From positions 317,234 to 381,233 of the forward strand of contig NW_018408516.1 in assembly GCF_002113885.1 (NCBI RefSeq): a DNA stretch of 64,000 nucleotides, written 5' to 3'. The stretch comes from Mizuhopecten yessoensis. Lineage: Eukaryota. This document shows, piece by piece, positions 10,888 to 62,019 of the stretch. Below the pieces are notes generated by a model that saw nothing but the letters and a program-made list of their open reading frames with translations, made no database searches and had not been told where the DNA came from. Positions within the stretch are counted from its first letter, which is position 1. Every line of letters starts with the position of its first letter. The position numbers were made by a program, and so were the translations under genes.

Positions 10888-13800
10888 TTATATAAATCTT
10901 TTTGAGTTCAAGATAAAGGTTGAGACACTCTCTAGGATATTTTTATTTGTTTCATTGTCACAATGGTTACAACCATTGAGTAAAGTATAGTGCGAGTGAT
11001 TATCATTGAGTAGAGTAGCAGAGAGTACTTGTCTGTGATTGTTGTATCTGGCACAGTCAAAGAAGTAATGATAACTTGTTTCCTGTATATAACCACACAC
11101 ACATGAAGCAGATTCTAATAGATGGTCATTAAAGAGATCAAAGTTTAAGTTGCTAGCATTATTTCTAATTTGACATAGTATACTATTGATTTTTCTATCA
11201 CCGGAATTTTTTACCACTGTCTGAGTATCATTATTAGGTATACTATTAGTTATGTTAATTAGTTTCTTAAAGTGGGGAAGAGATTGAGCATTTAAAATAT
11301 CTGGGTCTAACTGATTGTAAAGTCGAAAGGTTGAGGGAAAGAAACTATTAAAGTAGCTGTCAGTTCTGCATACAGGGGGGTTAAAAACTCTATTTAGTCT
11401 AAGCTGATATCTCACATTTGTTAAATCATTTAAAAAAGGATCAACTATATCATTAAGGTACTTTGGTGATATATTGTGCAATATTTTATACATTACAATT
11501 AATTTATTTTTTTCCCTCCTATCTGCTAAGGTTTCCCATCCCAATTCTTTGTACAATTTATGGTGTGATGTACCTCTACGAAGCCCTGTCACTACTCTAG
11601 CAGCATCTAGTTGGACTGATTCTAATAATAATTTTGATTGTTCAGTGCAATTATCCCAAACTACATTAGCATATTCTAAAATTGGTCTAATATAAGATAT
11701 ATACATAGTGTTAAGTGTACTTCTATCAAGTGAGGTTTTAAGACTTCTTAATATATTAATTCTTTTATATGCTGTATCATAAATATTTTGGATATGTTGA
11801 CCCCATTTACCATCTTCATTAAAAGTAAGACCTAAATGTTTATGGTTAGTACTGTCGGATAGTGGTTGATTAGAGAAGAAGATTGGAGGGTGATTAGTTT
11901 CTTTTTTCCGTGTGAAGATCATAGTTTTAGTTTTGGATGCATTAAATTTTATATCCCAAGATTTAGCCCAAGAACATATATTCTGCAAGTCATTAGTGAG
12001 ATTTTGTGCTGCTTGAATGGGATTATCATCAACAATAATATAGAGGGAGGTATCATCTGCAAAAAGTTTAATGTTACTAGTAACTATATTAGTGATGTCA
12101 TTTATATAGAGAAGGAAGAGAAATGGACCAAGGACAGATCCCTGAGGCACTCCTGCACTGATACATTTAAAAGTTGACTGGTGTCCTTCTGTAATAACCC
12201 TTTGTTTTCTCTCGGACAAGTAGTTCTTAAACCATGCCAGTAATTTTCCTTTAATTCCATAAGTTTCTAATTTATATATTAAACCGTCATGCCAAACCCT
12301 ATCAAAGGCTTTACTTACATCACAGAAGACAAATCTTACCTCTTTACCTTTATCTAAATTATTTATAATAGTGTGATATATAGATAATAATTGATTCACA
12401 GTTGAGTCACCAGGCAGGAAGCCTGACTGGTGCTCAGAAATAGTTTCAGCTGCTACAAGATAGTTATACAGGTACTTAAAGATGATTTTTTCAATAATTT
12501 TACTAAAGCAAGATGTAATTGAGATTGGCCTATAATTACTGGCATCATTTTGGGACCCCTTTCCCTTATATATAGCATTAACATTAGCAAGTTTCCATGA
12601 AGCAGGGATATGTCCAAGTTCTATCGTTTTGTTAAATAGTAATGTTAGTGGATATGATATTGAGGGTGTTAGTTTTTTAATTACTTTGGGTATAATTCCA
12701 TCAGGCCCTGCTGGTTTATTATCATTTAGTAGTTCAAGTTGGTCGATTACGTCTTGTTCAGATATGTCAATACTTTCTAATTGAAAGGGATAGTTATTTA
12801 CAATAGGTGGCAGTGGGTCAAGATTAGGAGAGGATGTTGCTATTGAGGTAAAGTAATCATTTAGTGTATTAGCTTTATCTATAGGATGTTGAAGAGATAT
12901 ACCGTTATGATCAAGAGGAGGAATGCTAGTTGATTTATTATTAAAATTAGATATAGACTTAGCTATTTTCCACCATTTAGATGGGGGTAAGGATTTATCA
13001 CTCAGAGATCTCTGTAGTTTTTCAAGATAATCCTTTTTCGTTTTCCTTATGATTTCAATAGTTTCGTTTCTAATATTTCTATATTTATTCCAGTGGTAAT
13101 GACTATTAGTTGATTTTGCTTTTCTATGGATCCTATTTTTTTGTCTTAGTTTTAATCTGATTTCATTATTTACCCATGGTTTATCATCTGGACGTATAGT
13201 AATTATTTTTGAAGGAATATAGTTATTTATTTGTTGATTAATATTGTTGGTAAGTATTTGGTTAAATTCTTCTGAGGTACTATTTTGCGCATGTGTCATC
13301 CAGTCAATATCTCTCAGTGATCTGTTCATTTGGTCAAAATCTGCATTATCATACAGTAATATAGTCTTTTTATAACACCTATGTTTATAGACAGAGTAGG
13401 AGACTGTAATATGTATAGGAGAGTGATCACTACAGAACTGAGGGCTTGTACATGCATTTTGAATGATTCTAGTATTATTAGTAAAGACAATATCTATAGA
13501 GGTTGAACTATTAGGAGTGATTCTTGTCGGTTCATTTATTAGACTGTTCAGATTATATTTAGTAAGAATTCTGCTGAGATGTGAGTTAGGATGTAGATTT
13601 AACATGTCAATATTTATGTCACCTGTTAAAATTATGTCTAATGAGGTATCAACAGCTTTATCCAATAAAATATCAAGTTGTGTCCAGTATTCTACATTAG
13701 ATTCCGGTCTATATATACACCCTAATAAAAATCTGCGATTACCAGTATGCACTTCTATCCAAATAAGTTCGATATCATCATGCTCCAGATCTAATCTTCT

Positions 13801-14384
13801 TTTAGTCTGAACAGTATTTTTAGAATATATCAAGACACCACCCCCCCCATCCTATTTTGTCTATCTTTTCTGTATGGTTCATTTGGAAATGAGTCTAGCA
13901 TAATATCATTATTGGGAATATCTGGTGTTAGATGCGTTTCTGTTAAGCAAATAATGTCATTTAGGTGCAGCTCGGAATCAACTATATCAAGTTTGTTCCT
14001 TACAGACCTAACATTGAGATGGGTGATTTCTATATTTTGCATGGGACCAGGATTAAGCTCAATGTCATTAGCAAGAAGAAGTATTTTTTGACTTACATAG
14101 CGGATATAGCTATTGTTATTAATTCTGAGTATAATATGACAATGTAGTACGGGACACAGGTACTCTGGTTGTGTATATGTAACGCAAGCATATTGGGATC
14201 TGATTATTACATACATGTATACTCCCCCTTCCTGCCCAGGAACCTCTGCTAGGTACTTACAATAGGTTAAGAGTGAGTTTATCATTTTAAGATTGTTAGG
14301 GTTCAGTCTGACCACTGGGGCCCACCACGGATGCCCGCATGCACACACACACACACACCAACATGTACATGTGTCATAACACAT
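10888..14384 (-). CDS. LINE ORF2 polyprotein (2A-like peptide, APE, RT), split by one frameshift in a G8 run at 13841-13848
   Basis: ORFs 13830-14384 and 10888-13833 join as RKDRQNRMGG(G)GVLIYSKN if one base is restored. The true start is uncertain. Confidence 0.85.
14043..14102 (-). other. 2A-like (StopGo) ribosomal skipping motif
   Basis: YVSQKILLLANDIELNPGP matches D(V/I)ExNPGP with a Leu-rich upstream helix, directly before the APE domain. Confidence 0.8.
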
Positions 14385-15989: not shown

Positions 15990-16920
15990 CGCATACTGTC
16001 CAACCAAACGTCGAGTCCCCCATACCGAAGCAATCTAACATGACGATAGTGATATGGGGCAAAACAGTAGTTTAGCAAGAAAGGGAATATTGATGATTGG
16101 AAAATAAACATCGTCATGATTTTCCTTACCGTTCCTAATAGTCATGTTGTAATTGAATAAACGAAACAAACATGTCTTGCTTTTTTTAGACGGCACATTG
16201 TCGAATATATTAAAGTGATATTTAAGGACTTGGTAGGGAAGTATTACTAGGATTAATACACTATTCAATAAAATAAGTCACATATGAAAACACAAACAAG
16301 TTAGCCCAGAAAAGGGGCAGAGCTTGTTCCCAAAGGAGAGCCTGATGGAAGATCTTGCCATCGAACTAAAAAAAAACATAATTCGAACTAAAAATCCCCG
16401 ATAAGACTAGGGCAAAATATGAACAAATGAAATACATGGATTCTCTTTAACAAGTACAAGGAAAATAGAATCAGGTGAACCGAAAGGGTAAGCGTTGTCT
16501 GCTTTATTGATGACATCCACCGTATAAATCAAGGTGAAATCCAGGTAATATCACGTCTTCAGAGTCAGAGCAGGGTATACGCGCAGTTATAACAAAAACA
16601 AGGCACTGTAGTGAGCATATCGACCTTCATATCGCACAAACACATCGACCTTCATATCGCACAAACAAATAGTATTCTTCCTCTGACATCATGATGGTGA
16701 GTACAACACTGGTCATACATGTAGTCTTTATCTACTTGTATTGATGGAAACCCTGTGTTGTATGTTTGTCCGCCAGCAGTCGACATCTATCACGGAAATC
16801 ACAATGTTCGGAGCAAGCTCTTTTGTACCGTATAAACGGAGACATGTAAACACCATGTAAAAAGGTTGGGGAAATGTCGATCTTTCGATCAAGAGAGACA
16901 AAGTTCACAATCGGAAAAAA
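15990..16920 (-). mobile_element. Degenerate Penelope-like RT remnants (two pieces)
   Basis: FDGKIFHQ.., NHDDVYFPIINIPFL and FPIVNFVSL...HGVYMSPFIRYKRACSEHCDFRDRCRLLADKHTTQGF resemble the PLE RT thumb/C-terminal region. Confidence 0.6.
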
Positions 16921-25679: not shown

Positions 25680-26640
25680 TGTCCAACCAAACGTCGAGTC
25701 CCCCATACCGAAGCAATCTAACATTACGATATTGATGTGGGGCAGAGTAGTGGTGTAGCAAGAAAGGGAATGTTGACAATTGGAAAATAAACATCGTCAT
25801 GATTTTCCTTACCATTCCTAATAGTCATGTTGTAATTAAATAAACGAAACAAATATGTCTTGGTTTTTTTAGACGGCACATTGTCGAATATATTAAAGTG
25901 ATATTTAAGGACTTGGTAGGGAAGTATTACTAGGATTAATACACTATTCAATAAAATCAGTCACATATGAAAACACAAGCAAGTTAGCCCAGAAAAGGGG
26001 CAGAGCTTGTTCCCAAAGGAGAGCCTGATGGAAGATCTTGCCATCGAACTAAAAAAACATAATTCGAACTAAAAATCCCCGATAAGACTAGGGCAAAATA
26101 TGAACAATTGAAATACATGGATACTCTTTAACAAGTACAAGGAAAATAGAACCAGGTGAACCGAAAGGGTAAGCGTTGTCTGCTTTATTGATGACATCCA
26201 CCGTATAAATCAAGGTGATATCCAGGTAATATCACGTCTTCAGAGCAGGGTATACGCGCAGTTATAACAAAAACAAGGCACTGTAGTGAGCATAATCAAA
26301 CACATCGACCTACATATCGCACAAACACATCGACCTACATATCGCACAAACACATCGATCTACATATCGCACAAACACATCGACCTTCATATCGCACAAA
26401 CAAATAGCATATTTCCTCTGACATCATGATGGTGACTACAACACTGGTCATACATGTAGTCTTTATCTACTTGTATTGATGGAAACCCTGTTGTATGTTT
26501 GTCCGCCAGCAGTCGACATCTATCACGGAAATCACAATGTTCGGAGCAAGCTCCTGAATACCGTATACACTGCGACATGTTAACGCTATATCAAGGGGAA
26601 ATGTCGATCTTTCTATCACGAGAGACAAAATTCAAAATCG
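25680..26640 (-). mobile_element. Degenerate Penelope-like RT remnants (paralog of 15990-16920), with a 25-bp x4 repeat at 26301-26400
   Basis: NHDDVYFPIVNIPFL; SQCIRYSGACSEHCDFRDRCRLL. Confidence 0.6.
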
Positions 26641-46400: not shown

Positions 46401-48288
46401 AGTTGGTGCCTTTAGTTGGTATTCCGACATAGTTCTCTAACTGAAGTACATCAGTTAATTTAGTTGCATCATGGTCGAGCAGACCATTTCTCTCACTTTC
46501 TATTGTCAATATGACGTCTAAGAAAGGCCTCCGTTTTGTCGGCAGCCATCCGCTGTACGAGCTGCTGTCGTGATTGGCATGGTGAGTAATTAGCGTTACA
46601 CAGTTAACGTCGGATAATGAGATACAAGAGGAAATGAGCCTAATTTCAATATATTTACATACAAGTCGCTGGTGGAGACGTTACGGGAACATTATACTGC
46701 TATACATGTCACCTAAAAGGCAGTTTGATGCGTTTAACAATATATGTCATCTTCAACAGTTGTTGATGTGGTAAATAGTGGCAAAGATGATTTTATTACC
46801 AGATTAGTTTTTTAACTGTATTGTCAACTTTATCATCATCATTACTTCATAAAGCTAAAATATTATATTATCAACTTAATAACCATCATTACTTCATATA
46901 GCTAAAATATTGTAAATTACTTAGTATAGTTATCACACTTGATTGTCAACTTAATAATCATCATTACTAAGTATTATACATACAAATAAAGCGTTTGAGA
47001 TCATAGTGAAGAAATTGATACTGCACGGCTAGTTAATGTATATGTAATACGTGGCTAGTTTCTCCCAGTTGTTAATTAGATGTATCCGTAATATCGCTAG
47101 TATAAAACTTCTCCAAGAAATTGCAGATTTTCAGTTGACCAGATACAATACAGATACTATGAAAAATGTATATGTCTTGTCAAATAAAACGTATTTAACC
47201 GTCTTTCCCGAAATACCATACTATATACGTTGGTTTTACTGTTATAAACTTTGCTATTGTATTATTAATTAAGTTTTAGATGATGGTGACTGGGCGGGTG
47301 CTATGTAAAAGTGAGCGTAAAGTTTTAGGACATGCGTAGGGATGGGAGGTCAGTATAGCTTACGGTAACTTTTCTCAATGTCAAAATGAAAATTTTGAAC
47401 TTTTTATTAACACAATCAGTAAAATCAAATTAAAAAAACTTGCAAGACTTATATTTAAAAACATTCGGGTTACCATTTGCGTATGGTAATTAGCTGATGT
47501 AGAACCAACATTTAGACAAACAACTTTCACCCGCACGCTACTGGTTTTATACGAAAGTGCAAAAAATGAAAAAATATAACGTTTAGTTTTTTATGAATTG
47601 ACGTAATACCATTTCGTTATAAATCGCTCTATTTCTATTTTTTTTATCCATTTCCGATTCAAGACAAGAGTGAAATATACTAATACTTAATAATCATGAC
47701 AATCAACTGGAACCTGTCTCTTATGGCAATTGGCTGATTCGTTTGAAAATGTGGGTAAAATGCATGTCTTATGATGGGTGTTGCTAAATAGATGGAATTT
47801 GTCTTATAGAATAATCAGTGAAACTAAGCGAAATTTGTCAGAAGGTCGAAAAATAATTAACTTATTATAATAAAATATTTGTACTTACGGTTCTGGCAAG
47901 GGTCGGGGCCTGTAATCGTGTTTTTATTGACACATGTGCCAATAGTGTTATTCCAGACCTGGGTACCACAGTTGAGGTTGTGAAGCGTGGTGCCGATACA
48001 CAGTATGTATTTGTTACAGTCGGAGGGATGGCTGAGGAACTTCTGGCCTACTATATCCTTACATAGATTCGTGACCTGACCTCGGACCTGAGGCCGGGCA
48101 TGTGGCCGGGCGTGGGGGCGGGCCTGCGGCCGGGCGTGAGGCCGGGCGCGAGGCCGGATCTGTGGCAGGGCCTGATGCCGGGCCTGGTGCCGGCCCTGAT
48201 GCCGGCCCTGATGCTGCCTTTTGGGGGGAAATATTGGGTATGCATATCCGACGCACAGAATAAGAATGAGGAGGACTTGGGTGTACAT
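37410..48288 (-). CDS. Secreted, highly basic chitin-binding protein (Arg/His/Pro/Gln tetrapeptide repeats + 3x ChtBD2-like), 315 aa; exons 48288-47889, 44941-44648, 37663-37410
   Basis: Signal peptide MYTQVLLILILCVGYA; HPSDCNKYILC; HPDKCAQYYDC..ECPYPLLFN; EYIANQC..CLPC..R. GT-AG phase-1 junctions at the same positions as in the paralogs; 948 nt in frame. Extra small exons cannot be excluded. Confidence 0.85.
37976..39925. repeat. ~51-bp minisatellite, about 38 copies, in intron 2
   Basis: Unit gtgacgtagtggtatattgatttttaattgttcagtattctctattgtatg. Confidence 0.95.
40080..40120. other. Assembly gap within a poly-C run
   Basis: 41 N flanked by C runs. Confidence 1.
41650..41830 (+). mobile_element. 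tRNA-derived SINE (V-domain-like core)
   Basis: tRNA-like head with an A-box-like segment (taatgcagtgg) and a B box (ggttcgattcc), followed by ttttcgccgggtactctggtttc, which resembles the V-SINE central domain. No tRNA acceptor stem or 3' end. Confidence 0.65.
42421..42553. repeat. ~44-bp tandem repeat, 3 copies
   Basis: gaggagtacaaacactgctgtacctttggtattagccttcgtg x3. Confidence 0.85.
43240..43735 (+). mobile_element. Penelope-like element 3' remnant (GIY-YIG endonuclease half) with an internal 84-bp duplication
   Basis: RKFGTRLKEHQKDV...NKSAVTEHA..HNHIADWN...ESIRVRR...NRDEEGHQLSHLYD. The duplication is at 43352 and 43436. Confidence 0.7.
44127..44311. mobile_element. Tc1/mariner (pogo/Tigger-like) MITE with a duplicated 5' end
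   Basis: TA|CAGTAAAACCTCGATAT at 44127 and 44168; inverted TATAACGAGGTTTTTATTG|TA ending at 44311; TA target sites. Confidence 0.65.
45394..46080. repeat. 50-bp perfect tandem repeat, about 13.7 copies, in intron 1
   Basis: tgtgtagcatggcttccatacagatagttaacatcttatattgttagaag, with no visible variants. Confidence 0.98.
46145..46300 (-). mobile_element. Possible old LINE ORF2 C-terminal remnant
   Basis: Reverse translation NTFKSSFFLNIVTDVNGPPAEIVE resembles the SFFPRT..DWN.LP motif. Confidence 0.35.
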
Positions 48289-49336
48289 CTCTCCGGTGAC
48301 GACCCGCGGGGACGTCTTAACACAGCAGAACGTACGACGAAAGTGAAAAGGCGACGGACAGGTAGGCTAACAATTGTCTTAATTACCTTACATCACACCC
48401 TGACGGTGATCTGACTGGCTGGTTAAGGATCTAATTTACATACGGCAGGGAAATCACGAGGTGACATCTCGGTGATATATCACCGTACCTCGTATGTTCA
48501 TCTCGCTTGTTCAAAGTATAGCTTCAATAAGGAATTAACGAAATGTAATCGTTATTCATTTATTAGTACATGTTGCTAGTCCTTACAAAAATATATTAAT
48601 GATAATGTGAAGGGGATAAGACTAATCTAATAAATAAAATGATGTGATTATTTTGTTTTGAGATAGTAAAATAGAATGTTGTTTCTGTAATATGATTTTT
48701 GTCAGAGTGAGTTTACAAGGCATTGGTAAACGTGAACCTTCTTTGTATATTCATTAATCATTAGTCACTCCAAACTTCATTAGTAATTAGTAATTCAATT
48801 TGTTGCCGACGCAATATAAGTTGCATTGTGGAAAGGGTGTTCATTTAGAGGGACAGAGTAAATGAGGTCTTCAAAGACTATATACATATATGGATATATC
48901 ACTCCCGTGACAACCACATTGTAATGTAGTGTCTTATAAATTAATACTCATATTCATACAGAGGAAAGGTTTCCCCTGATAAATATAGCACGATGAGCAT
49001 AACGATCGTTGTACATATGAATATGGCCATCAACTCAGTTTTGTGTAAAAGTAATAATTAAAGATAACAAGTCAAGATAATTAAACCCGGTAGAATTTAT
49101 TTAGATAAGACTCACTATCAACAAACAGTGTCGTGTTAATTACTGGGGGGTAGCTATTTTACTGATTTTCCATATCAGCACCAAATTACTATATCACCTT
49201 TTTTCTTTCGCGTCTAGATGTTGTTTATTTCTGGATTTCCTGAGTGTTCATGGAAGGAAAATCGCACGGTCATCATCAGGAGCTGATTTCTCACTATCAT
49301 AATGCTATGTCTACCGTAACAGATACGTTGTTTTCA

Positions 49337-52300
49337 TGGATTTACACCATAAACCGTGACGGGTGAACTACGTAGGTATCCTCCTGGATTTACCGCCATA
49401 AACTGTGACGGGTGAACTACGTAATTATCCTCCTGGATTTAATACCATAACAGGTGACGGGTGAATTACGTTGGTATCCTCCTGGATTAACACCATAAAC
49501 CGTGACGGGTGAACTACGTAGGTATCCTCCTGGATTTACCGCCATAAACCGTGACGGGTGAACTACGTAATTATCCTCCTGGATTTAATACCATAACAGG
49601 TGACGGGTGAACTACGTAAGTATCCTCCTGGATTTAATACCATAACAGGTGACGGGTGAATTACGTTGGTATCCTCCTGGATTAACACCATCAACCGTGA
49701 CGGGTGAACTACGTAGGTATCCTCCTGGATTTGCCGCCATAAACCGTGGCGGGTGAACTACGTAATTATCCTCCTGGATTTAATGCCATAACAGGTGACG
49801 GGTGAACTACGTAAGTATCCTCCTGGATTTACCGCCATAAACCGTGACGGGTAAACTACGTAAGTGTCGTCCTGGATTTAACACCAGATATCCTCCTGGA
49901 TTTAAAACCATAAACCGTGACGGGTGAACTACGTAGGTATCCTCCCGGAATTAATACCATAAACCGTGACGGGTGCACTACGTAGGTATCCTCCTGGATT
50001 TACCGCCATAACCCGTGACGGGTGAACTACGTAAGAATCCTGCTGGATTTACCGCCCTAAACCGTGACGGGTGAACTATTTAACACCATAAACCGTGACA
50101 GGTGAACTACGTAAGTATAAACCGTGACGGGTAAACTACGTAAGTATCCTCCTGGATTTACCGCCATAAACCGTGACGGGTAAACTACGTAAGTATCGTC
50201 CTGGATTTAACACCAGATAACCTCCTGGATTTAAAACCATAAACCGTGACGGGTGAACTACGTAAGTATCCTCCTGGATTTAACACCATAAACCGTGACG
50301 GGCGAACTACGTAGATATCCTACTGGATTTAACACCATAAACCATGACGGGCGAACTACGTAAGTATCCTCCTGGATTTACCACCATAACCCGTGACGGG
50401 GGAACTACGTAGATATCCTTCTGGATTTACCACCATAAACCGTGACGGGTGAACTACGTAGATATCCTCCTGGATTTACACCATAAACCGTGACGGGTGA
50501 ACTACGTAGGTATCCTCCTGGATTTAACACCATTAACCGTGACGGGTGAACTACGTAGGTATCCTCCCGGCATTAACACCATAAACCGTGACGGGTGAAC
50601 TACGTAAGTATCCTCCTGGATTTACCACCATAACCCGTGACGGGTGAACTACGTAGATATCCTTCTGGATTTACCACCATAAACCGTGACGGGTGAACTA
50701 CGTAGATATCCTCCTGGAATTAATACCATAAACCGTGACCGGTGAACTACGTAGATACCCTTCTGGATTTACCACCATAACCCGTGACGGGTGAACTATG
50801 TAGATATCCTTCTGGATTTTACACCATAAACCGTGACAGGGGATCCTCCTGGATTAACACCACAAACCGTGACGGGAAAACTACGTAATTATCTTCCTGG
50901 AATTAATACTATAAACCGTGACGGGTGATCCTCCTGGATTAACTCCATAAACCGTGACGGGTAAATTACGTAGATATCCTCACCATAACCCGTGACGGGA
51001 AAACTACGTAATTATCTTCCTGGAATTAATACCATAAACCGTGACGGGTGAACTACTTAGATATCCTCCTGGATTTAACACCATAAACCGTGACAGGTGA
51101 TCCTCCTGGATTAACACCATAAACCGTGACGGGAAAACTACGTAAGAATCCTCCAGGATTTATCACCATAAAACGTGACGGGAGAACTACGTAGATATCC
51201 TCCTGGATTTACCATCATAAACCGTGACGGGTGAGCTACGTAGGTATCCTCCTGGAGTTAACACCATAAACCGTGACGGGAGAATTACGTAGGTATCCTC
51301 CTGTAGTGACCACCATAAACCGTGATGGGTGAATTACGTAGGAATCCACCTGGATTTAAGAACTACGTAGATATCCTCCTGGATTTAACACCATAAACCG
51401 TCACAGGTGATCCTCCTGGATTAACACCATAAACCGTGACGGGAAAACTACGTAAGAATCCTCCAGGATTTATCCCCATAAAACGTGACGGGTGAACTAC
51501 GTAGATATCCTCCTGGAATTAATACCATAAACCATGACGAGTGAACTACGTAATTATCCTCCTGGATTTACACTTTAAACCGTGACGGGTAAACTACGTA
51601 ATCATCCTCCTGGAATTAACACCATAAACCGTGACGGGTGAACTACGTAAGTATCCTCCTGGATTTAACACCATAAAACGTGACGGGTGAACTACGTAAT
51701 TATCCTCCTGGCTTAACACCATAAACCGTGACGGGTGAACTACGTAAGTATCCTCCTGTAGTGACCACCATAAACCGTGATGGGTAAATTACGTAGGAAT
51801 CCTCCTGGATTTAACACCATAAACCGTGATGGGTGAATTGCGTAGGAATCCTCCTGGATTTAACACCATAAACCGTGACGGGTGAACTACGTAGGTATCC
51901 TCCTGGATTTACACCATAAACCGTGATGGGTGAACTACGTAGGTATCCTCCAGGATTTACACCATAAACCGTGACGGGTGAACTACGTAGATATCCTACT
52001 GGATTTAACACCATAAACCATGACGGGTGAACTATGTAGGTATCCTCCTGGATTTAACACCATAAACCATGAGTAGTGACCACCATAAACCGTGATGGGT
52101 AAATTACGTAGGAATCCTCCTGGATTTAACACCATAAACCGCTACGTAGATATCCTCCTGGAATTAATACCATACCCCATGACGGGTGAACAACGTAATT
52201 CTCCTCCTGGATTTACACTTTTAACCGTGACGGGTAAACTACGTAATTATCTACTACGTAGATATCCTCCTGGATTTACACCATAAACCTTGATGGGTGA

Positions 52301-55300
52301 ACTACGTAGGTATCCTCCAGGATTTACACCATAAACCGTGACGTGTGAACTACGTAGATATCCTCCTGGATTTAACACCATAAACCGTGTCGGGTGAACT
52401 ACGTAGATATCCTCCTGGATTTACCACCATAAACCGTAACGGGTAAACTACGTAATTATCCTCCTGGACTTACACCATAAACCGTGACGGGTGAACTATG
52501 TAGTTATCCTCCTGGATTTACCACCATAAACCGTGACGGGTGAACTACGCAGGTATCCTCCTGGATTTACACCATAAGCCGTGACGGGTGAACTACGTAG
52601 ATATCTGAACTACGTAATTATCCTCCTGGCTTAACACCATAAACCGTGACGGGTGAACTACGTAGGTATCCTCCTGGATTTACACCATAAACCGTTATGG
52701 GTGAACTACGTAGGTATCCTCCAGGATTTACACCATAAACCGTGACGGGCGAACTACGTAGATATCCTCCTGGATTTAACACCATAAACCGCTACGTAGA
52801 TATCCTCCTGGAATTAATACCATAAACCATGACGGGTGAACAACGTAATTCTCCTCCTGGATTTACACTTTTAACCGTGACGGGTAAACTACGTAATTAT
52901 CCTCCTGGACTTACAATAAACCGTGACGGGTGAACTACGTAGATATCCTCCGGGATTTACACCATAAACCGTGACGGGTGAACTAGGTAGGTATCCTCCG
53001 GGATTTACACCATAAACCGTGACGGGTCAACTACGTAGATATCCTCCTGGATTTAACACCATAAACCATGAGTAGTGACCACCATAAACCGTGATGGGTA
53101 AATTACGTAGGAATCCTCCTGGATTTAACACCATAAACCGTGTCGGGTGAACTACGTAGATATCCTCCTGAATTTAACACCATAAACCGTGACGGGTGAT
53201 CTACGTAGATATCCTCCTGGATTTAACACCATAAACCGCTACGTAGATATCCTCCTGGAATTAATACCATAAACCATGACGGGTGAACAACGTAATTCTC
53301 CTCCTGGATTTACACTTTAAACCGTGACGGGTAAACTACGTAATTATCTTCCTGGAATTAATACCATAAACCGTGACGGGGGAACTACGTAGATATCCTC
53401 CTGAATTTAACACCATAAACCGTGACGGGTGAACTACGTAGATATCCTCCCGGAATTAATACCATAAACCATGACGGGTGAACTACGTAGGTATCCTCCT
53501 GGATTTAAGACCTTAAACCATGACGGGTGAACTACGTAAGTATCCTCCTGGATTTAACACCATAAAACGTGACGGGTGAACTACGTAGGTATCCTCCTGG
53601 ATTTAACACCTTCAACCATGACGGGTGAACTACGTAAGTATCCCCCTGGCTTTACCATCATAAACCGTGACGGGTGAGCTACGTAGGTATCCTCCTGGAG
53701 TTAACACCATAAACCGTGACGGGTGAATTACGTAGGTATCCTCCTGTAGTGACCACCATAAACCGTGATGGGTGAATTGCGTAGGAATCCTCCTGGATTT
53801 AACACCATAAACCATGACGGATGAATTGCGTAGGAATCCTCATAGATTTAACACCATAAACCGTGATGGGTGAACTACGTCAGTATCCTCCTGGATTTAA
53901 CACCATAAAACGTGACGGGTGAATTACGTAGGAATCCTCCTGGATTTAACACCATAAACCATGACGGATGAATTGCGTAGGAATCCTCATAGATTTAACA
54001 CCATAAACCGTGATGGGTGAACTACGTCAGTATCCTCCTGGATTTAACACCATAAAACGTGACGGGTGAACTACGTAATTATCATCCTGGCTTTAACACC
54101 ATAAACCGTGACGTGTGAACTACGTAGGTATCCTCCTGGATTTACACCATAAACCGTGACGGGTGAACTACGTAAGTATCCTCCTGTAGTGACCACCATA
54201 AACCGTGATGGGGGAATTACGTAGGAATCCTCCTGGATTTAACACCATAAACCATGACGGATGAATTGCGTAGGAATCCTCATAGATTTAACACCATAAA
54301 CCGTGACGGGTGATCCTCCTGGATTAACACCATAAACCGTGACGGGTAAATTACGTAGATATCCTCCCGGAATTAATACCATAAACCATGACGGGTGAAC
54401 TACGTAATTATCCTCCTGGATTTACACCTTAACCGTGACGGGTAAACTACGTAATCATCCTCCTGGAATTAACACCATAAACCGTGACGGGTGAATTACG
54501 TAGGTATCCTCCTGGAATTAACACCATAAACCGTGTCGGATGAACTACGTAATTATCCTCCTAGATTTAACACCATAAACCGTGACGGGTGAACTACGTA
54601 GATATCCTCCTGGATTTACACCATAAACCGTGACGGGTGAACGTAAGAATCCTCCTGGATTTAACACCATAAACCGTGACGGGTGAACTACGTAGATATA
54701 CCCCTGGCTTTACCATCATAAACCGTGACGGGTGAACTACGTAAGTATCCTCCTGTAGTGACCACCATAAACCATGATGGGTGAATTACGTAGGAATCCT
54801 CCTGGATTTAACTCCATAAACCGTGACGGGTGAATTACGTAGGAATCCTCCTGGATTTAACACCATAAACCGTGACGGGTGAACGTAAGTATCCTCCTGG
54901 ATTTAACACCATAAACCGTGACGGATGAACTACATAATTATCTTCCTCGATTTAACACCATAAACCGTGACGGGTGAACTACGTAATTATCCTCCTGGCT
55001 TTACCATCATAAACCGTGACGGGTGAATTACGTAGGTATCCTCCTGGATTTAACACCATAAACCGTGACGGGTGAAATACGTAAGTATCCCCCCTGGCTT
55101 TAACATCATAAACCGTGACGGGTGAATTACGTAGGAATCCTCCTGGAATTAAAACCATAAACCGTGACGGGTGAACTACGTAAGTATCCTCCTGGATTTA
55201 ACGCCATAAACCGTGACTGGTGAACTATGTAGGTATGTGACGGGTGAATTACGTAGGTATCCTCCTGGAATTACCACCATAACCCGTGACGGGTGAACTA

Positions 55301-56167
55301 CGTAGATATCCTCCTGGATTTAACACCATAAACCGTGACGGGTGAATTACGTAGGTATCCTCCTGGATTTAACACCATAAAACGTGACGGGTGAACTACG
55401 TAAGTATCCTCCTGGATTTACCGCCATAAACCGTGACTGGTGAACTATGTAGGTATCCTCCTGGATTTAACACCATAACCCGTGACGGGTGAACTACGTA
55501 GGTATCCTCCTGGATTTAACACCATAAACCGTGACGGGTGAATTACGTAGATTTCCTCCTGGATTTAACACCATAAACCGTGACGGGTGAACTATGTAGG
55601 TATCCTCCTGGATTTACCACCATAAACCGTAACGGGTAAACTACGTAATTATCCTCCTGGACTTACACCATAAACCGTGACGGGTGAACTACGTAGGTAT
55701 CCTCCTGGATTTACCACCATAAACCGTGACGGGTGAACTACGTAGGTATCCTACTGGATTTAACACCATTAACCGTGACGGGTGCACTACGTAGGTATCC
55801 TCCTGGATTTAACACCATTAACCGTGACGGGTGAACTACGTAATTATCCTCCTGGATTTACCACCTTAAACCGTAACGGGTGAACTACGTAATTATCCTC
55901 CTGGACTTACACCATAAACCGTGACGGGTCAATTACGTAGGTATCCTCCTGGATTTACCACCATAAACCGTGACGGGTGAACTACGTAATTATCCTCCTG
56001 GATTTACCACCATAAAACGTGACGGGTGAACAACATAAGAATCCTCCTGGATTTACCACCATAAACCGTGACGGGTGAACTACGTAGGTATCCTCCTGGA
56101 TTTACCGCCATTAACCGTGACGGGTCAATTACGTAGGTATCCTCCTGGATTTACCACCATAAACCGT
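49337..56167. repeat. 48-49-bp satellite array, ~6.8 kb, roughly 140 units
   Basis: Consensus ggatttaacaccataaaccgtgacgggtgaactacgtaggtatcctcct with many variant and truncated units. Confidence 0.98.
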
Positions 56168-56192
56168 GACGGTTTATGGTGGTAAATCCAGG
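56144..56192. repeat. Perfect fold-back palindrome (24-bp arms, 1-nt centre)
   Basis: cctggatttaccaccataaaccgt-g-acggtttatggtggtaaatccagg. Confidence 0.95.
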
Positions 56193-56195
56193 TAA

Positions 56196-57466
56196 ATTCA
56201 TAAGAATTGGGCTCGATCCACAGCCCAAATCTTAGTTCAACACTACCGTACTAAAATTTCGGAAACGTTAGGCATAATCACAGCCCACAATTTCCCCAAT
56301 TCAAGCGTTAACTCATTTTCGGCCACTGCTTTAGAATGGGTGTCCAAAAACTTTAAACATAAACTCCATGGAAGTACGGTCACGGCATTCATAAACATTA
56401 TACCCAGTTTTACCAGTCTGTCTCTGAACCAGCCGCCGCCTCTCACCGCTCACGCCCCCCAACCCGCTCCAAACTATCCTTTCAACCGCCTAACCCTAAC
56501 CATCCTTCTACATCCCCCTCTCGCTCTACTTCGCCCACTCCCCTTAACCCTTCCCCCGAGCACTCCTTCTCCACTCCTCTAACCCGTCGTCGGTCGAACC
56601 GCATAACTAAACCTCACCCTAACCCCGCTCCTGTCTTCACCTCTAACCGCTTCCGCACCCTCTCTCCTACTAACACCCCGACTACGCCCTCTAAGCGTAA
56701 ACGGGCCTCTTCTCCCACTTCTCCATCACCTCCTGGCACTCCCTCTAAACTTCACAAACCCTTCTCTGTCCGCCCCGTCTCTACTAAAAAGACTAAACAC
56801 ACTTCCGCCCCACCGCCTCCTCTCACCCCCACTCTATCTCCTCCGCAATCCTATGCACAAGTCACCAAGACGGTAAAAGATACAGGTTCAGCCGGTATCT
56901 TAAATCGTCACCCCAACACCTCTAACAAATCGGCCTGGCGTCTCCCTGCCATTAAAAAGCCGATTCTGGTGATTGGGGCCTCCAACCTCTCCCGTGTCTC
57001 ACGGTGTCCAGATACAAACGTCCAGATCGAATCTTTTCCGGGGGCCAAAATTAGGCATTTGATTGAAATTATTCGTAATTATGAGTACCCCGATCTTCCA
57101 AAAAACATCATTCTGAACATTGGTATAAATGATAGGTCAACCAGGAACATAAATGACGTGTTCAGGGATCTATCCCTCCTCCGTGAGGTTTTACGCAAGC
57201 ATCTCCCGTTAGCTCGATACTTTTTTACTATCGTGCCCATTTCGGAAACCTTGGCCAACCAAAAACCGGGAGAAGCTGCACTTTTAGAAGAATTCAATCA
57301 AGAACTCATGAAATCCAAAAACAAGGCCTTTTCATTCTTGGACAGTTGTATCCGAGGGGGGTTCAGGTTTACAGCGGACGGCATTCATTGGTCAGAGTCT
57401 ATGGCCAATGAATTAGTCCGACTTTGGGTTTCTAAGGCTAAAGGAAGCAAGTCTTTTTTTGCTTAG
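56196..57466 (+). CDS. PLE ORF1: helical N-terminal part, Pro/Ser/Thr-rich linker and SGNH/GDSL esterase domain; 5'-truncated, with one apparent frameshift near 56400-56460
   Basis: The frame of ORF 56969 is open from 56363 (SNRFRTL, SYAQVTK). SGNH blocks: VIGASN (Ser), SFPGAK (Gly), NIGIND (Asn), DGIHW (Asp/His). Confidence 0.8.
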
Positions 57467-59667
57467 ATCCTAAAGGGATAGACCAGGACCACCCTTCAAA
57501 CACCATTAACCTAAGCTCTAGGAATCTATCTAACCCTGAATCCAAACTGCTAGATAAGGGCCTCAAATTTATACCAACTCCAAAACATATTCCTAAATCA
57601 GATTTCTTTCAATCTGCCTCTGACTTTAGCCGAAAAATCAAAATCACGCATTTTTTCCATAATAAATCCAAAAATCACCAGGCAAAAAAATTCGTAAGCA
57701 AAAGCAACTGGAAACCACCAGAATCAGCCATTCCTCCAAGCATTCAAAATTCGGTCAAAAATATATTGAAAGATATTTCCAAAATCCAAATTCAAAAAGA
57801 ACCAAACAATTTGACCAAGGCAGAAATGGAAGCAATTAAATCACTCAAAAAAGACAATTCTATTGTAATCAAAAAAGCCGACAAAGGCTCTTCAACGGTT
57901 ATCATGGACAGATCCGATTATATTTGGGAAGTTGAGAGGCAACTAAATAACCTCAAACATTATAAGAAATTAGAGGCTCCCATCTACCCCAAAACAAGCA
58001 TAGAGTTACTTAAAACCCTCAAGATATTAGAACATAACAAATTCCTAAACAAAAAACAAGTAGAATACCTTAGGCCAAAAGATGATCCTAAACCCAGACA
58101 TGTCTATATCCTACCAAAAATCCATAAACCACCCGAAACGTGGTCCAAACCATTCTCAATCCCCCCAGGTAGGCCTATCATATCTGATGTAGAGAGTGAA
58201 TCATATAGAATTTCAGAATACATTGACCATTTCTTAGCTCCGCTCTCAATGAAACACCCAGCGTATATCAGAGATACTTTTGATTTCATCAACAAAATAA
58301 GCAATTTGGTTATCCCTCAAAATAGTCTCCTTATTAGTTTAGATGTAGAAAGCATGTACACAAACATCGATAACCGAGATGGTCTTAAAGCTGTAGCGCA
58401 AACATTCTTAGATAATCCATGCCCGGACAGACCAGATTTAGAAATTCTAGAACTACTCAAATCAGGACTAACTAAAAATGATTTTGAATTCAACGGACAG
58501 TGGTATCTTCAAGTCTCAGGAACAGCAATGGGTAAAAAATTCGCCCCAAGTTATGCCAACATTTTTATGGCCCAATTCGAAAAAGAAGCCTTAAATAAAT
58601 GCGACAACAAACCGCTAATCTATGTCAGATTTCTGGACGATATCTTTATCATTTGGACTCACACCAGAGAAAAATTTGATGATTTTTTCAACATTTTAAA
58701 TAACCACCATCCGTGTATTAAACTCAAAGCCACGATTAGTGAAGAATCAATTGATTTCCTCGACACCACAATTTTCAAAGGTCCGGAGTTTAACACTACA
58801 GGCAAACTCGACATCAAAGTGTATTTCAAACCTACGGACACTCACCAACTGCTACACAAAAAATCTTTTCATCCCAAACATTCATTCAAGGGAATCATAA
58901 AATCGCAAATACTTCGTTTTCATCGCATTTGTACGCAAGAATCGGATTTCAATACAGCAGTCCACATCTTGTTCAAAGCTCTTAGGAATAGAAATTATTC
59001 TTACAGATTTCTTCGTAAAATCAAAGGAGAGACCTTGGCAGAAATCAACCCGCCTATAAAACACACGACCAAACCTTGTCTCAGTAAGCGCTGTGCGACT
59101 TGTCCATTTACCAAAACAACCACTTCTTTTGTCAGCTCTAATAACTCTAGTGCTCATTATATTTCGGAAAACCTGAATTGCGGATCCAGAAATGTCATTT
59201 ATCTGATAACTTGTACCAATTGTAGGATGCAATATGTAGGACAAACCACACTAACTCTTAGAGAGAGATTCACATGCCATCGCTTTGACATAATACACGC
59301 CAAAGACAAACCAGTTTCAAACCATTTTAACCAAATTAACCACACTCTAAAAGATGTTTCCATAATTCCAATTGAGAGAGTTCCCAATTCGGACCAACTA
59401 GACGATAGGGAACAATTTTGGATGAATAAACTTCAAACCCTAAAACCTAACGGTATTAATGAAAAAGCCATTTCGAACCAAATTCTCCCCTTTGTCATTA
59501 CCTACAATAGGACAGCCCAAACAGCGAGCCACAAGGTAAGAAAACATTACGTAGACTTAAGAACAAAGTTACCAGAAGTATTCAAATCTAAACTAGTTAC
59601 AGCCTACCGTAAAAACAAAAGTTTGCAAGACCTGTTAGTTCGTAGCCGACTTAAAGCAGCAACATAA
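57442..59667 (+). CDS. PLE ORF2: reverse transcriptase + GIY-YIG endonuclease (~740 codons open, no ATG at the 5' end)
   Basis: INLSSRNL..E..LL.KGLKFIPTP; IKKADKGS; LPKIHK; GRPIIS; LDVESMYTNI; GTAMG..FAPSYANIFM; RFLDDIF; YFKPTD; CLSKRCATC; NVIYLITC..C..QYVGQT; REQFW..KL.T..PNGIN. Confidence 0.95.
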   Translation, partial: RKQVFFCLDPKGIDQDHPSNTINLSSRNLSNPESKLLDKGLKFIPTPKHIPKSDFFQSASDFSRKIKITHFFHNKSKNHQAKKFVSKSNWKPPESAIPPSIQNSVKNILKDISKIQIQKEPNNLTKAEMEAIKSLKKDNSIVIKKADKGSSTVIMDRSDYIWEVERQLNNLKHYKKLEAPIYPKTSIELLKTLKILEHNKFLNKKQVEYLRPKDDPKPRHVYILPKIHKPPETWSKPFSIPPGRPIISDVESESYRISEYIDHFLAPLSMKHPAYIRDTFDFINKISNLVIPQNSLLISLDVESMYTNIDNRDGLKAVAQTFLDNPCPDRPDLEILELLKSGLTKNDFEFNGQWYLQVSGTAMGKKFAPSYANIFMAQFEKEALNKCDNKPLIYVRFLDDIFIIWTHTREKFDDFFNILNNHHPCIKLKATISEESIDFLDTTIFKGPEFNTTGKLDIKVYFKPTDTHQLLHKKSFHPKHSFKGIIKSQILRFHRICTQESDFNTAVHILFKALRNRNYSYRFLRKIKGETLAEINPPIKHTTKPCLSKRCATCPFTKTTTSFVSSNNSSAHYISENLNCGSRNVIYLITCTNCRMQYVGQTTLTLRERFTCHRFDIIHAKDKPVSNHFNQINHTLKDVSIIPIERVPNSDQLDDREQFWMNKLQTLKPNGINEKAISNQILPFVITYNRTAQTASHKVRKHYVDLRTKLPEVFKSKLVTAYRKNKSLQDLLVRSRLKAAT

Positions 59668-59692
59668 ACACTTAGGCCAGTGCACAGGGATT

Positions 59693-60164
59693 AAACCCTA
59701 ATCCCTAACCTTAATCCTTAAACCTAACCCATATCACACAACAATTACATGTTTACTAACCCTAACCCTAACCCTAACCCATATCACACAACAATTACAT
59801 GTTTACTAACCCTAACCCTAACCCATATCACACAACAATTACATGTTTACTAACCCTAACCCTAACCCATATCACACAACAATTACATGTTTACTAACCC
59901 TAACCCTAACCCATATCACACAACAATTACATGTTTACTAACCCTAACCCTAACCCATATCACACAACAATTACATGTTTACTAACCCTAACCCTAACCC
60001 ATATCACACAACAATTACATGTTTACTAACCCTAACCCTAACCCATATCACACAACAATTACATGTTTACTAACCCTAACCCTAACCCATATCACACAAC
60101 AATTACATGTTTACTAACCCTAACCCTAACCCTAACCTATATCACACAACAATTACATGTTTAC
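59693..60164 (+). repeat. Telomere-type repeats: 10 units of 44 bp = ATATCACACAACAATTACATGTTTAC + (TAACCC)3-4
   Basis: Units at 59731, 59781, 59825, 59869, 59913, 59957, 60001, 60045, 60089 and 60139, preceded by degenerate TAACCC. Confidence 0.97.
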
Positions 60165-60635
60165 ATGTACTTATGAGATCGTGATGGCGACCATAAAACA
60201 CGTGCAGCGTCTTTATCAACCTGCATCTTTGGAAACCCTGTTTTGTAGCTTTGCTCATTAGCAGTCGACCTCTATCACGAACACATGATATTTCGTGCAG
60301 CTTTTGAACACCGAACCAACTGTGACATGTTAACATCGTATGTAGGGGAAGCAAAATCGAAATCGTCAATCTTGTTGTACAGAGTAACAGTGAGTCATCA
60401 TTTTGGTCATACTGTAAGTAAAGATCAATGAAACCGTTCTGAAGTAGCAGAGTCTGTAGTTTCCTTGATTTCGGGCTCAGGGGGATAAATACGAAATATG
60501 TGGTCATCAAAATTCCTTGTATTAGGTCCAATACATATTGTTATTGAAAAACCGGCAACTCGTCAATATATCTAAATGTGAAATTAAAAGACTTTGATAG
60601 GTTTTTGTTATTAGTCCTGATATTAAGCTTATACA
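60139..60635 (-). mobile_element. Degenerate Penelope-like RT remnant (related to 16700-16920)
   Basis: SFNFTFRYIDELPV...; RDRGRLLMSKATKQGFQRCRLIKTLHVFYGRHHDLI. Confidence 0.7.
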
Positions 60636-60654
60636 GTATGGTTTGAACATTTAT

Positions 60655-61062
60655 CACCCAACAAATAACCCTAATAACCCTAACTCACAAATAACCCTAA
60701 CCAACAAATAACCCTAATAACCCTAACTCACAAATAACCCTAACCAACAAATAACCCTAATAACCCTAACTCACAATTAACCCTAGTAACCCTAAGTCAC
60801 AAATACACCTAACTCACAAATAACTCTAACCAACAAATAACCCTAATAACCCTAACTCACAAATAACACTAATAACCATAACTCACAAATAACCCTAACC
60901 AACAAATAACCCTAATAACCCTAACTCACAAACAACCCTAGTAACCCTAACTCATAAATAGCGCTAGTAAACCTAACTCACAAATAACCCTATTCAACCT
61001 AACTCACAAATAACCCTAACCAACAAATAACCCTTAATAACCCTAACTCACAAATAACCTAC
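60655..61062 (+). repeat. Degenerate telomere-like array (aaataaccctaataaccctaactcac)n
   Basis: Repeated TAACCCTAA cores with caca/ccaac spacers and a ~43-bp higher-order unit. Confidence 0.9.
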
Positions 61063-62019
61063 ACTTTTTATCCCGTACTGTAGACAAGGAGATAAACACT
61101 ACATACGATTTCTGGGCAATTCTTAGTCAAACGCAATATAATGACCGTAGATTATGTAGGAAAAAATAGTCAAGTCCAGGATGCAATCATGCAAATGTAA
61201 TGTCCTCGTTCTCTTCTCAAAGGAGAAGAATTAGGTGCCCACCAGGCTTGAATTACTGACCATTTTCCATATTTGAAAAAAGATCGAAAAAAATATCCCT
61301 ACGACAGCTTTCATAAACGGACCAAAGTATCCACAAAATAATATCATTAATTCGAATATGTATTTTGAAAGACTAATGGATTCCGCGAATGATTACGCCA
61401 GACAAAGCAAACAACGAGCGCATGTTGGTTTAATTTAAAGGTGATTTTAATTTACCGGTTCCGTTATCCAAAAAAGGAATGGACAGCTGGTAATCCAAGA
61501 TAAAAAACAGCTTACAAGTATAAACTGTATATTGGTACTGATGTCCAAAACACACAAAACGATCTGCATGAAAAATCTGTGGCTATGTCGGCCGACTAAA
61601 CATCTGCAAACTTAATCCTTGTATGCAAACACTATTATATTTGCTGCTTTAAAAACATAGGCTTGGTCGATAACCATGTATACATTCTGCATTTTGTTCG
61701 AAAGACGAAATACTTACCAATCATGATTATGTAGTACAAACACATACTGGTCAGTATCTGCCTCACTTGTATTGGTTTGTCGATGGTTCTGCTTGTTGGC
61801 AAACCAAACCCCTATCCCAACTTCTATTTACCAATATTGATACTATAAAATCATCACGATAAATAATATGTAAGGGATCGCCTATTTAAATATTCAACTA
61901 TTAAATGCAGAAATCAACACATTTACTGCATCATGCTGCCATTTTGTTTATTTAGAACTCAGATTATGTCACAACACATTTTCACTAGAACAGATAATAG
62001 CTTGAATATTCATATTCGT

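What the first reader, a model, noticed from the sequence alone, without database searches (positions are those of the whole stretch)
59693..60164. 3' junction built from ten cycles of [flanking target DNA + telomeric repeats]: telomerase-like reiteration by a PLE RT?
Seen: the element ends in sense-strand (TAACCC)n, which includes CTAACCCTAAC. Each 44-bp unit also contains a 26-mer whose last copy (60139) continues directly into the older RT remnant. A homolog of that 26-mer (atatcgcacaaacaaata...tgacatcatgatgg) occurs in the related remnants at ~16654 and ~26389 with no telomeric repeats, so the 26-mer is target DNA rather than element DNA. On the cDNA (minus) strand the order is target end, (GGGTTA)3-4, target 26-mer, (GGGTTA)3, and so on, then the element. 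Known: PLE RTs are the sister group of telomerase, CUAACCCUAAC is the TTAGGG telomerase template, and endonuclease-less Athena-type PLEs use telomeric repeats to prime at chromosome ends. Inference: repeated priming and template switching during insertion, or later slippage of the junction, created an interstitial telomeric array from an endonuclease-bearing PLE.
Basis: partly seen in the sequence, partly recalled or inferred. Interest (0 to 1): 0.8.

Follow-up and report, generated by a model that had tools for sequence, protein, structure and literature searches.

The report
Minisatellite at a retrotransposon's telomere-like tail
A young Penelope-like retrotransposon that ends in telomere-type repeats sits next to a tandem array whose 44-base unit is its tail plus 26 bases of neighbouring DNA. 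The array looks like one unit copied as a block, as in an ordinary minisatellite, rather than ten rounds of telomerase-like priming.

Summary
Window 59725-60164 reads (TAACCC)1, then ten copies of a 26-mer separated by (TAACCC) tracts of 4,3,3,3,3,3,3,3,4 repeats.

The 26-mer is target DNA. It lies inside an old, abundant RT-like repeat family, is unique to this locus, and is absent from eight other copies of the element. Those copies all end in a single (TAACCC) tail of about 2 to 7.5 repeats.

The telomerase-like reading is not favoured, for six reasons:
- Seven identical (TAACCC)3 spacers indicate block copying.
- At least 16 other loci carry [(TAACCC)2-4 + own spacer] arrays. None of the five I could inspect has an element within 1.5 kb.
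- Those arrays show higher-order repeats. One spacer is a chimera of both flanks.
- Arrays of this size class cover 6-19% of the DNA sampled from this genome.
- Contig depths hint that unit number varies between individuals.
- Two 5'-truncated copies show no long target duplication.

Two things remain unresolved: whether the element or the array came first, and whether the first duplication happened during integration.

Two points are worth keeping. This is an endonuclease-bearing, Neptune-type element with an Athena-like C-strand telomeric tail. Its copies also cluster in telomere-like DNA, and two of them hit the same 70-bp stretch of one old repeat.

This scan's earlier notes cover the element and its 5' junction but not this array.

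The parts
49334..56172 (.). 49-bp satellite (about 7 kb) that forms the 5' flank of the element. It is not the missing upstream part of the old repeat.
   Evidence: TRF, self-BLAST. No old-family homology at 47000-49340.
56144..56200 (.). Snap-back palindrome joining the last satellite unit to the 5'-truncated element.
   Evidence: Read directly. Noted earlier as s1-528279.
56193..59724 (+). 5'-truncated Neptune-type Penelope-like element: ORF1 region, RT plus GIY-YIG ORF (57766-59667), and a 57-nt 3' UTR made of degenerate TAACCC-like units.
   Evidence: Pfam RVT_1 and GIY-YIG. A C-x4-C-x2-C linker and two Cys between GIY and YIG are visible in the translation. 100% identical to L001 over 725 bp and 99.95% to L003 over 2031 bp.
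59725..59730 (+). The single (TAACCC) unit between the UTR and the first 26-mer.
   Evidence: Other copies carry about 2 to 7.5 units here.
59731..60164 (+). Ten copies of the 26-mer separated by (TAACCC) tracts of 4,3,3,3,3,3,3,3,4 repeats. The last tract ends in TAACCT.
   Evidence: The 26-mer is found only here in the 988-Mb genome.
60139..60650 (-). Fragment of an old, abundant RT-like repeat family. The last 26-mer is its first 26 bases on the + strand, and a motif-C-like FTFRYID stretch lies at about 60560-60585.
   Evidence: 749 candidates, 62-83% identity. Family sequence continues on both sides of the 26-mer homologue in other copies. Atlas neighbours carry RVT_1/HTH_animal. No Pfam hit on fragments.
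60658..61059 (+). Second, older and degenerate array (43-bp period, units built on AATAACCCTAAC) at the other end of the old fragment.
   Evidence: TRF 76% matches. Only weak matches at three other contigs.

Best explanation
A very young, 5'-truncated, endonuclease-bearing (Neptune-type) Penelope-like element carries an element-encoded tail of C-strand telomeric repeats. It lies beside a 26-bp stretch inside an old RT-like repeat. The ten units were not made by ten priming cycles. One 44-bp unit, (TAACCC)3 plus the 26-mer, was copied as a block by ordinary tandem-repeat processes: replication slippage or unequal sister-chromatid exchange between the direct repeats. This genome makes minisatellites at a very high rate. 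Shown: the tail is a family trait, the 26-mer is target DNA, the interior units are identical, and the same architecture exists elsewhere without the element. Inferred: that the copying was DNA-level, and that the element's insertion came first. I put element-first at about 60:40 over insertion into an existing array. The first duplication could itself have been a single template switch at integration.
For: Eight other copies end UTR-(TAACCC)~2-7.5-flank with no 26-mer. The tails vary in length, so seven consecutive exact (TAACCC)3 spacers flanked by edge variants of 4 and 4* fit block copying, not independent syntheses. With at most 3 of 8 tails near length 3, the chance is at most about 0.001. 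A pattern search found 230 matches against 0 in the control, from at least 16 other loci with [(TAACCC)2-4 + locus-specific spacer] arrays. The five loci held with flanks show no PLE protein or UTR within 1.5 kb. They show higher-order repeats of 120, 161 and 211 bp and 74-92% unit identity. In L071 the spacer is right-flank start joined to left-flank end at a GAT microhomology, the signature of a segmental tandem duplication. Minisatellites (15-70 bp period, at least 3 copies) cover 6.1% of 116 kb of unrelated loci and 18.6% of the window. About 10% of (TAACCC)3 loci lie in such arrays. This is similar to 1 of 9 element tails. Ratios of unit-contig depth to flank depth are 5.7, 4.3, 3.7 and about 6.5 in four individuals, against 7 in the reference. 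There are no long target duplications in L001 or L005. The homologous site in two paralogues has its own 25-bp tandem repeat, x2 and x4.
Against: The element is nearly identical to its siblings, so a post-insertion array had little time to arise and grow; generic birth rates would make that rare. Only one TAACCC unit lies between the UTR and the first 26-mer, fewer than in the repeated unit, which needs a later contraction. Microhomology at the 26-mer-to-TAACCC joint is only about 1 nt. The depth-based copy numbers are rough, and the tool warns against using depth. No allele with a single junction or an empty site was seen.
Confidence: 0.55

Rival explanations
1. During target-primed reverse transcription, the PLE RT alternated between its (UAACCC)n RNA tail and the single-stranded 26-nt target stretch, building all ten units in one integration event in a telomerase-like way.
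For: The array sits exactly at the 3' junction of a very young copy. Its units are identical, as expected if made at once. The spacer is the copy's own flank. Tail length varies between copies, so the RT or its primer slips on the repeats. Locus-specific [telomeric + spacer] arrays recur genome-wide and could be abortive events.
Against: None of 8 other copies shows it. Seven identical three-repeat spacers are unlike the variable tails. The last cycle would have copied one repeat and then read into the UTR, while nine earlier cycles stopped exactly at the UTR boundary. Similar arrays lack any element and show higher-order repeats and a chimeric spacer that RT cycling cannot make. No 26-bp-class target duplications in L001 or L005. 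The opposite-strand insertion in L003 lies about 60-67 bp away, not 26 bp.
Confidence: 0.17
2. The [26-mer + TAACCC] minisatellite existed first. The element then inserted into it because its C-strand tail anneals to the G-strand of telomere-like DNA at a nick, an interstitial form of Athena-type priming.
For: Arrays of this kind exist without elements. Telomere-like 12-mers lie within 1.5 kb downstream of 4 of 9 copies, against 2 clusters in 146 kb of control DNA. An old telomere-like array lies about 500 bp away. A single TAACCC unit at the element side is natural for priming inside a tract. The array-flank junction is present in 4 of 4 individuals although the element is extremely young.
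Against: No array remnant or old-family sequence lies 5' of the element. The TAACCC tracts are perfect, like fresh element tails. The source of the earlier telomeric tracts is unexplained. Contigs could not show an allele with the array but without the element.
Confidence: 0.22
3. Telomerase, not the element, added the telomeric tracts at a break (ITS insertion during double-strand-break repair), or a small circle was copied by rolling circle, and the adjacency to the element is secondary.
For: Telomerase-mediated ITS insertion at breaks is documented in mammals (PMC7215372, abstract). Arrays occur without elements.
Against: The first TAACCC unit continues directly from the element's conserved UTR. 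Chance adjacency of a 10-copy element to one of about 300 telomeric loci is very unlikely.
Confidence: 0.05

Closest known systems
Athena/Coprina endonuclease-deficient Penelope-like elements
   Same: The 3' end carries short stretches of reverse-complement (C-strand) telomeric repeats, thought to anneal to G-rich DNA for priming (PMC8557442, introduction and Fig. 1 legend).
   Different: This element has a C-terminal GIY-YIG endonuclease, sits at interstitial unique or repeat DNA, and shows no hammerhead ribozyme next to the repeats. That paper lists the telomeric stretches as a feature of EN- elements.
Neptune/Nematis-type EN+ PLEs and the microsatellite insertion bias of PLEs
   Same: RT plus C-terminal GIY-YIG with a CX2-5CxxC linker. 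PLEs are reported to favour microsatellite targets, and the linker is proposed to mediate this in Neptune (PMC8557442).
   Different: Here the repeat is telomeric and is carried by the element itself: a conserved degenerate UTR followed by perfect repeats. It is not obviously target-derived.
Micro- and minisatellites born from retroelement 3' tails (Alu/L1 poly-A tails, CR1-type tails; my own knowledge)
   Same: A simple-repeat tail seeds a tandem array that grows by slippage or unequal exchange.
   Different: The unit here spans the tail-target junction and includes 26 bp of target, giving an interstitial telomeric minisatellite.
Short interstitial telomeric sequences inserted by telomerase during break repair (PMC7215372)
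   Same: Short perfect TTAGGG-type tracts at internal sites flanked by unique DNA.
   Different: Here the tract is continuous with a retrotransposon UTR and is reiterated together with flanking DNA.

Membership tests
Penelope-like element, EN+ (canonical C-terminal GIY-YIG) | Reverse transcriptase domain | tested here: met
   PF00078 RVT_1, E 6.8e-09, above the gathering score.
Penelope-like element, EN+ (canonical C-terminal GIY-YIG) | C-terminal GIY-YIG endonuclease with two Cys between GIY and YIG | tested here: met
   PF01541, E 2.9e-05, residues 477-558. The C-x2-C between the two motifs is visible in the translation.
Neptune/Nematis-type PLE | CX2-5CxxC Zn-finger-like linker between RT and EN | tested here: met
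   A C-x4-C-x2-C stretch lies upstream of GIY-YIG in the ORF translation. Criterion from PMC8557442. Clade placement by phylogeny was not done.
Penelope-like element (general) | Pseudo-LTRs with a hammerhead ribozyme | tested here: inconclusive
   No HHR at E<=1 in 55800-61300, but this copy is 5'-truncated, so the pLTR may be missing.
Athena-type telomere-associated PLE | No endonuclease domain | tested here: not met
   GIY-YIG is present.
Athena-type telomere-associated PLE | Reverse-complement telomeric repeats at the 3' end | tested here: met
   All 8 readable sibling copies end in a (TAACCC) tail of about 2 to 7.5 repeats after a conserved UTR.
Athena-type telomere-associated PLE | Location at chromosome ends, attached to G-rich overhangs | tested here: not met
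   The flanks are unique or dispersed-repeat DNA, though telomere-like tracts are enriched nearby.
Telomerase-like reiterative repeat addition | Repeated copying of a short template with translocation, shown biochemically | not testable with these tools
   Only indirect evidence: tail length varies between copies, while the spacers in the array are uniform.
Ordinary minisatellite / VNTR | Head-to-tail units with homogeneous interior and variant edge units | tested here: met
   Spacer pattern 1,4,3x7,4*. TRF 96% matches.
Ordinary minisatellite / VNTR | Unit number varies between individuals | tested here: inconclusive
   Depth ratios of 3.7-6.5 against 7 in the reference, across four runs. These are contigs only, and depth is a rough measure.
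Ordinary minisatellite / VNTR | The same process acts elsewhere in the genome without the element | tested here: met
   At least 16 other arrays. Five inspected lack the PLE. Higher-order repeats are present. Baseline minisatellite coverage is 6-19%.

The most novel reading that the evidence does not exclude
An endonuclease-bearing PLE uses an Athena/telomerase-like C-strand tail to prime on telomere-like DNA inside chromosomes. Its RT, by abortive or reiterated priming with local target duplication, is the source of the dozens of locus-specific [telomeric repeat + spacer] minisatellites in this genome, including this one.
Probability: 0.17. Interest if true: 0.75.

Novelty: new variant of a known kind. 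Interest (0 to 1): 0.4.

Why it matters
If the ordinary reading holds, the array is one more minisatellite seeded at a retroelement tail. It is of local interest only, as an example of how interstitial telomeric repeats get amplified.

The surrounding facts are more useful. This is a young, probably active EN+ Penelope-like family with an element-encoded telomeric C-strand tail. Its copies cluster in telomere-like DNA and hit the same short stretch of an old repeat twice. That narrows the supposed divide between endonuclease-bearing PLEs and the telomere-attaching, endonuclease-less ones.

It also offers a natural substrate for testing how PLE reverse transcriptases, the sister group of telomerase, choose and extend primers.

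Tried and rejected
- **More genome fetches.** The association test rests on five arrays with flanks.
- **The same ORF in other assemblies.** The look-up of encoding contigs with two start choices found nothing.
- **Old flank family.** Pfam and NCBIfam gave no hit on its fragments, and BLASTP against the PLE ORF gave nothing. Its RT nature rests on motifs read by eye and on Atlas neighbours.
- **Target-site duplications.** I looked in the two copies with readable 5' ends (L001, L005) and found none of 9 bp or more.
- **Missing upstream half of the old repeat.** It is not 5' of the element or 5' of the 49-bp satellite.
- **Reads.** The contigs could not show the UTR-to-first-26-mer junction in other individuals. 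No contig was laid on 59731-59751, but low-depth links are dropped from such contigs, so this says nothing.
- **Rejected: the 26-mer is element 3' UTR.** It is absent from all sibling copies.
- **Rejected: assembly chimera through shared telomeric k-mers.** A mis-join would keep a long telomeric overlap, not a single repeat.
- **Literature.** Searches found no report of EN+ PLEs with telomeric tails or of such arrays. Gladyshev and Arkhipova 2007 is not held.

Full report
**What is there.**
Reading 59300-60600 and running TRF confirm a 44-bp-period array at 59719-60164. The 27-mer is present ten times against none expected. Parsed exactly, the region is:
- the stop codon at 59665-59667;
- a 57-nt UTR made of degenerate TAACCC-like units;
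- one TAACCC;
- ten copies of a 26-mer (S) separated by TAACCC tracts of 4,3,3,3,3,3,3,3,4 repeats, the last tract ending in TAACCT.

The last S continues into 60165 onward. The ORF 57766-59667 matches RVT_1 and GIY-YIG. Its translation shows a C-x4-C-x2-C linker and two cysteines between GIY and YIG. No hammerhead or other relevant RNA family was found.

**Is the 26-mer element or target?**
The window's genome (988 Mb) holds about ten further copies of the element's 3' end at 93-100% identity. In all eight with a readable end, the conserved UTR is followed by a (TAACCC) tail of about 2 to 7.5 repeats and then directly by unrelated DNA. None contains S. A subfamily at about 88% identity also ends in TAACCC-type repeats (L010). 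The tail is therefore a family trait and S is not element DNA.

S is found nowhere else in the genome. The flank 60139-60650 belongs to an old dispersed family with 749 candidates at 62-83% identity. In about 30 fetched copies the family sequence runs on both sides of the S homologue and on past the equivalent of 60650. Read on the minus strand, the flank and its relatives carry RT-like motifs. Atlas neighbours carry RVT_1/HTH_animal, although Pfam does not score the fragments.

**What the junction lacks.**
The upstream half of the old repeat is not found 5' of the element or 5' of the 7-kb 49-bp satellite that abuts it. There is no simple target duplication or empty-site structure here. The two sibling copies with readable 5' ends (L001, L005) show no duplication of 9 bp or more either.

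**Ten cycles or one unit copied?**
Sibling tails vary widely in length. Seven consecutive spacers of exactly three repeats, bracketed by four-repeat variants, are what block duplication of a 44-bp unit gives. Independent rounds of synthesis would not. The RT-cycling model also needs nine cycles that stop exactly at the UTR boundary, followed by a tenth that copies one repeat and reads on.

**A genome-wide class.**
A pattern of three TAACCCTAACC blocks spaced 20-40 nt apart gave 230 matches and none in the reversed control. Besides pure telomeric runs, these come from at least 16 other loci, each with its own 9-40-bp spacer. I hold five of them with flanks (L046, L064, L067, L068, L071). In these:
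- none has the PLE protein or UTR within 1.5 kb;
- the spacers are continuous with their own flanks;
- unit identity is 74-92%, and there are higher-order repeats of 120, 161 and 211 bp;
- in L071 the spacer is the start of the right flank joined to the end of the left flank at a GAT microhomology.

Only duplication of a segment spanning a short telomeric tract explains the L071 structure.

**Is a special mechanism needed?**
Minisatellites with a 15-70-bp period and at least 3 copies cover 6.1% of 116 kb of unrelated loci and 18.6% of this window. Among the first ~45 loci with (TAACCC)3, four or five are such arrays, about 10%. That is the same order as one of nine element tails.

In its favour, the ordinary process also explains the 25-bp tandem repeat (x2 and x4) at the homologous site of the two paralogues at 16615 and 26297.

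Against it is timing. The copy is 100% identical to L001 and 99.95% to L003, so a post-insertion array had little time to arise.

**Other individuals.**
Contigs of four runs from four studies contain the flank without differences. Three of them also contain the array-to-flank junction. The ratio of unit-contig depth to flank depth is 5.7, 4.3, 3.7 and about 6.5, against seven such units in the reference. The four-repeat variant also differs between runs. This suggests VNTR behaviour, but it rests on contig depth, which the tool warns is rough. The element-side junction could not be assessed.

**Order of events.**
Two observations suggest the element seeks telomere-like DNA:
- Such tracts lie within 1.5 kb downstream of 4 of 9 copies, against 2 clusters in 146 kb of control sequence.
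- An old degenerate telomere-like array sits at 60658-61059.

In L003 the element's tail abuts the same old family about 60-67 bp from the window's site, on the other strand. That speaks for a target preference, and against S being the stretch between the two nicks.

Insertion into a pre-existing array therefore remains a serious rival.

**Comparison with what is known.**
PMC8557442 lists reverse-complement telomeric stretches as a feature of EN- PLEs (Athena, Coprina) and reports microsatellite insertion bias for EN+ PLEs. I found no report of an EN+ family with an element-encoded telomeric tail in the library. One key paper is not held.

The array itself is best filed as a minisatellite seeded at a retroelement tail. 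The element is a variant of a known kind.

The genome's size and contig count match, from my memory, a scallop assembly. Another note of this scan says the same. I did not verify this.

Noticed in passing
Genome places listed (e.g. C338:48363, C367:32705, C862:214589, C946:8270, C2533:411239, C3873:105360-106351, C4544:135027, C4666:27825); loci L046, L064, L067, L068, L071: At least 16 independent tandem arrays whose unit is (TAACCC)2-4 plus a locus-specific 9-40-bp spacer. The five inspected have no PLE nearby and show higher-order repeats.
   Followed up: partly
L003:2038-2131 versus window 60131-60198: A second copy of the same ~10-copy PLE family is inserted in another copy of the same old repeat family, about 60-67 bp from the window's site and in the opposite orientation. 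This suggests a sequence-specific target.
   Followed up: partly
L007, L008, L011 downstream flanks; window 60658-61059: Short telomere-like tracts lie within 1.5 kb downstream of 4 of 9 PLE copies, against 2 clusters in 146 kb of control DNA. The family sits in telomere-like-rich neighbourhoods.
   Followed up: partly
window 16615-16665 and 26297-26402: At the site homologous to the 26-mer, two paralogous copies of the old repeat carry their own 25-bp tandem repeat (2 and 4 copies) without telomeric repeats. The site appears slippage-prone.
   Followed up: no
window 60153-60168: An 8-bp tandem duplication (TTACATGT x2) spans the right boundary of the 26-mer. The repeated unit ends in the middle of its second copy.
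   Followed up: no
window 60658-61059: A degenerate 43-bp array built on AATAACCCTAAC with 5-7-bp spacers replaces the rest of the old RT-like fragment. It is locus-specific (three weak matches elsewhere).
   Followed up: partly
whole window: 18.6% of the window lies in minisatellites of 15-70-bp period (17 merged blocks), including the 7-kb 49-bp satellite at 49334-56172.
   Followed up: partly
run X5, loose end at window 59731: One contig joins the PLE UTR plus one TAACCC to a different sequence (starting GCCCGCGCC) at high depth. This is a tail junction not seen among the reference copies I read.
   Followed up: no
window 10888-14384, minus strand: Two adjacent long ORFs (981 aa and 184 aa) that I did not examine; possibly another retroelement.
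   Followed up: no
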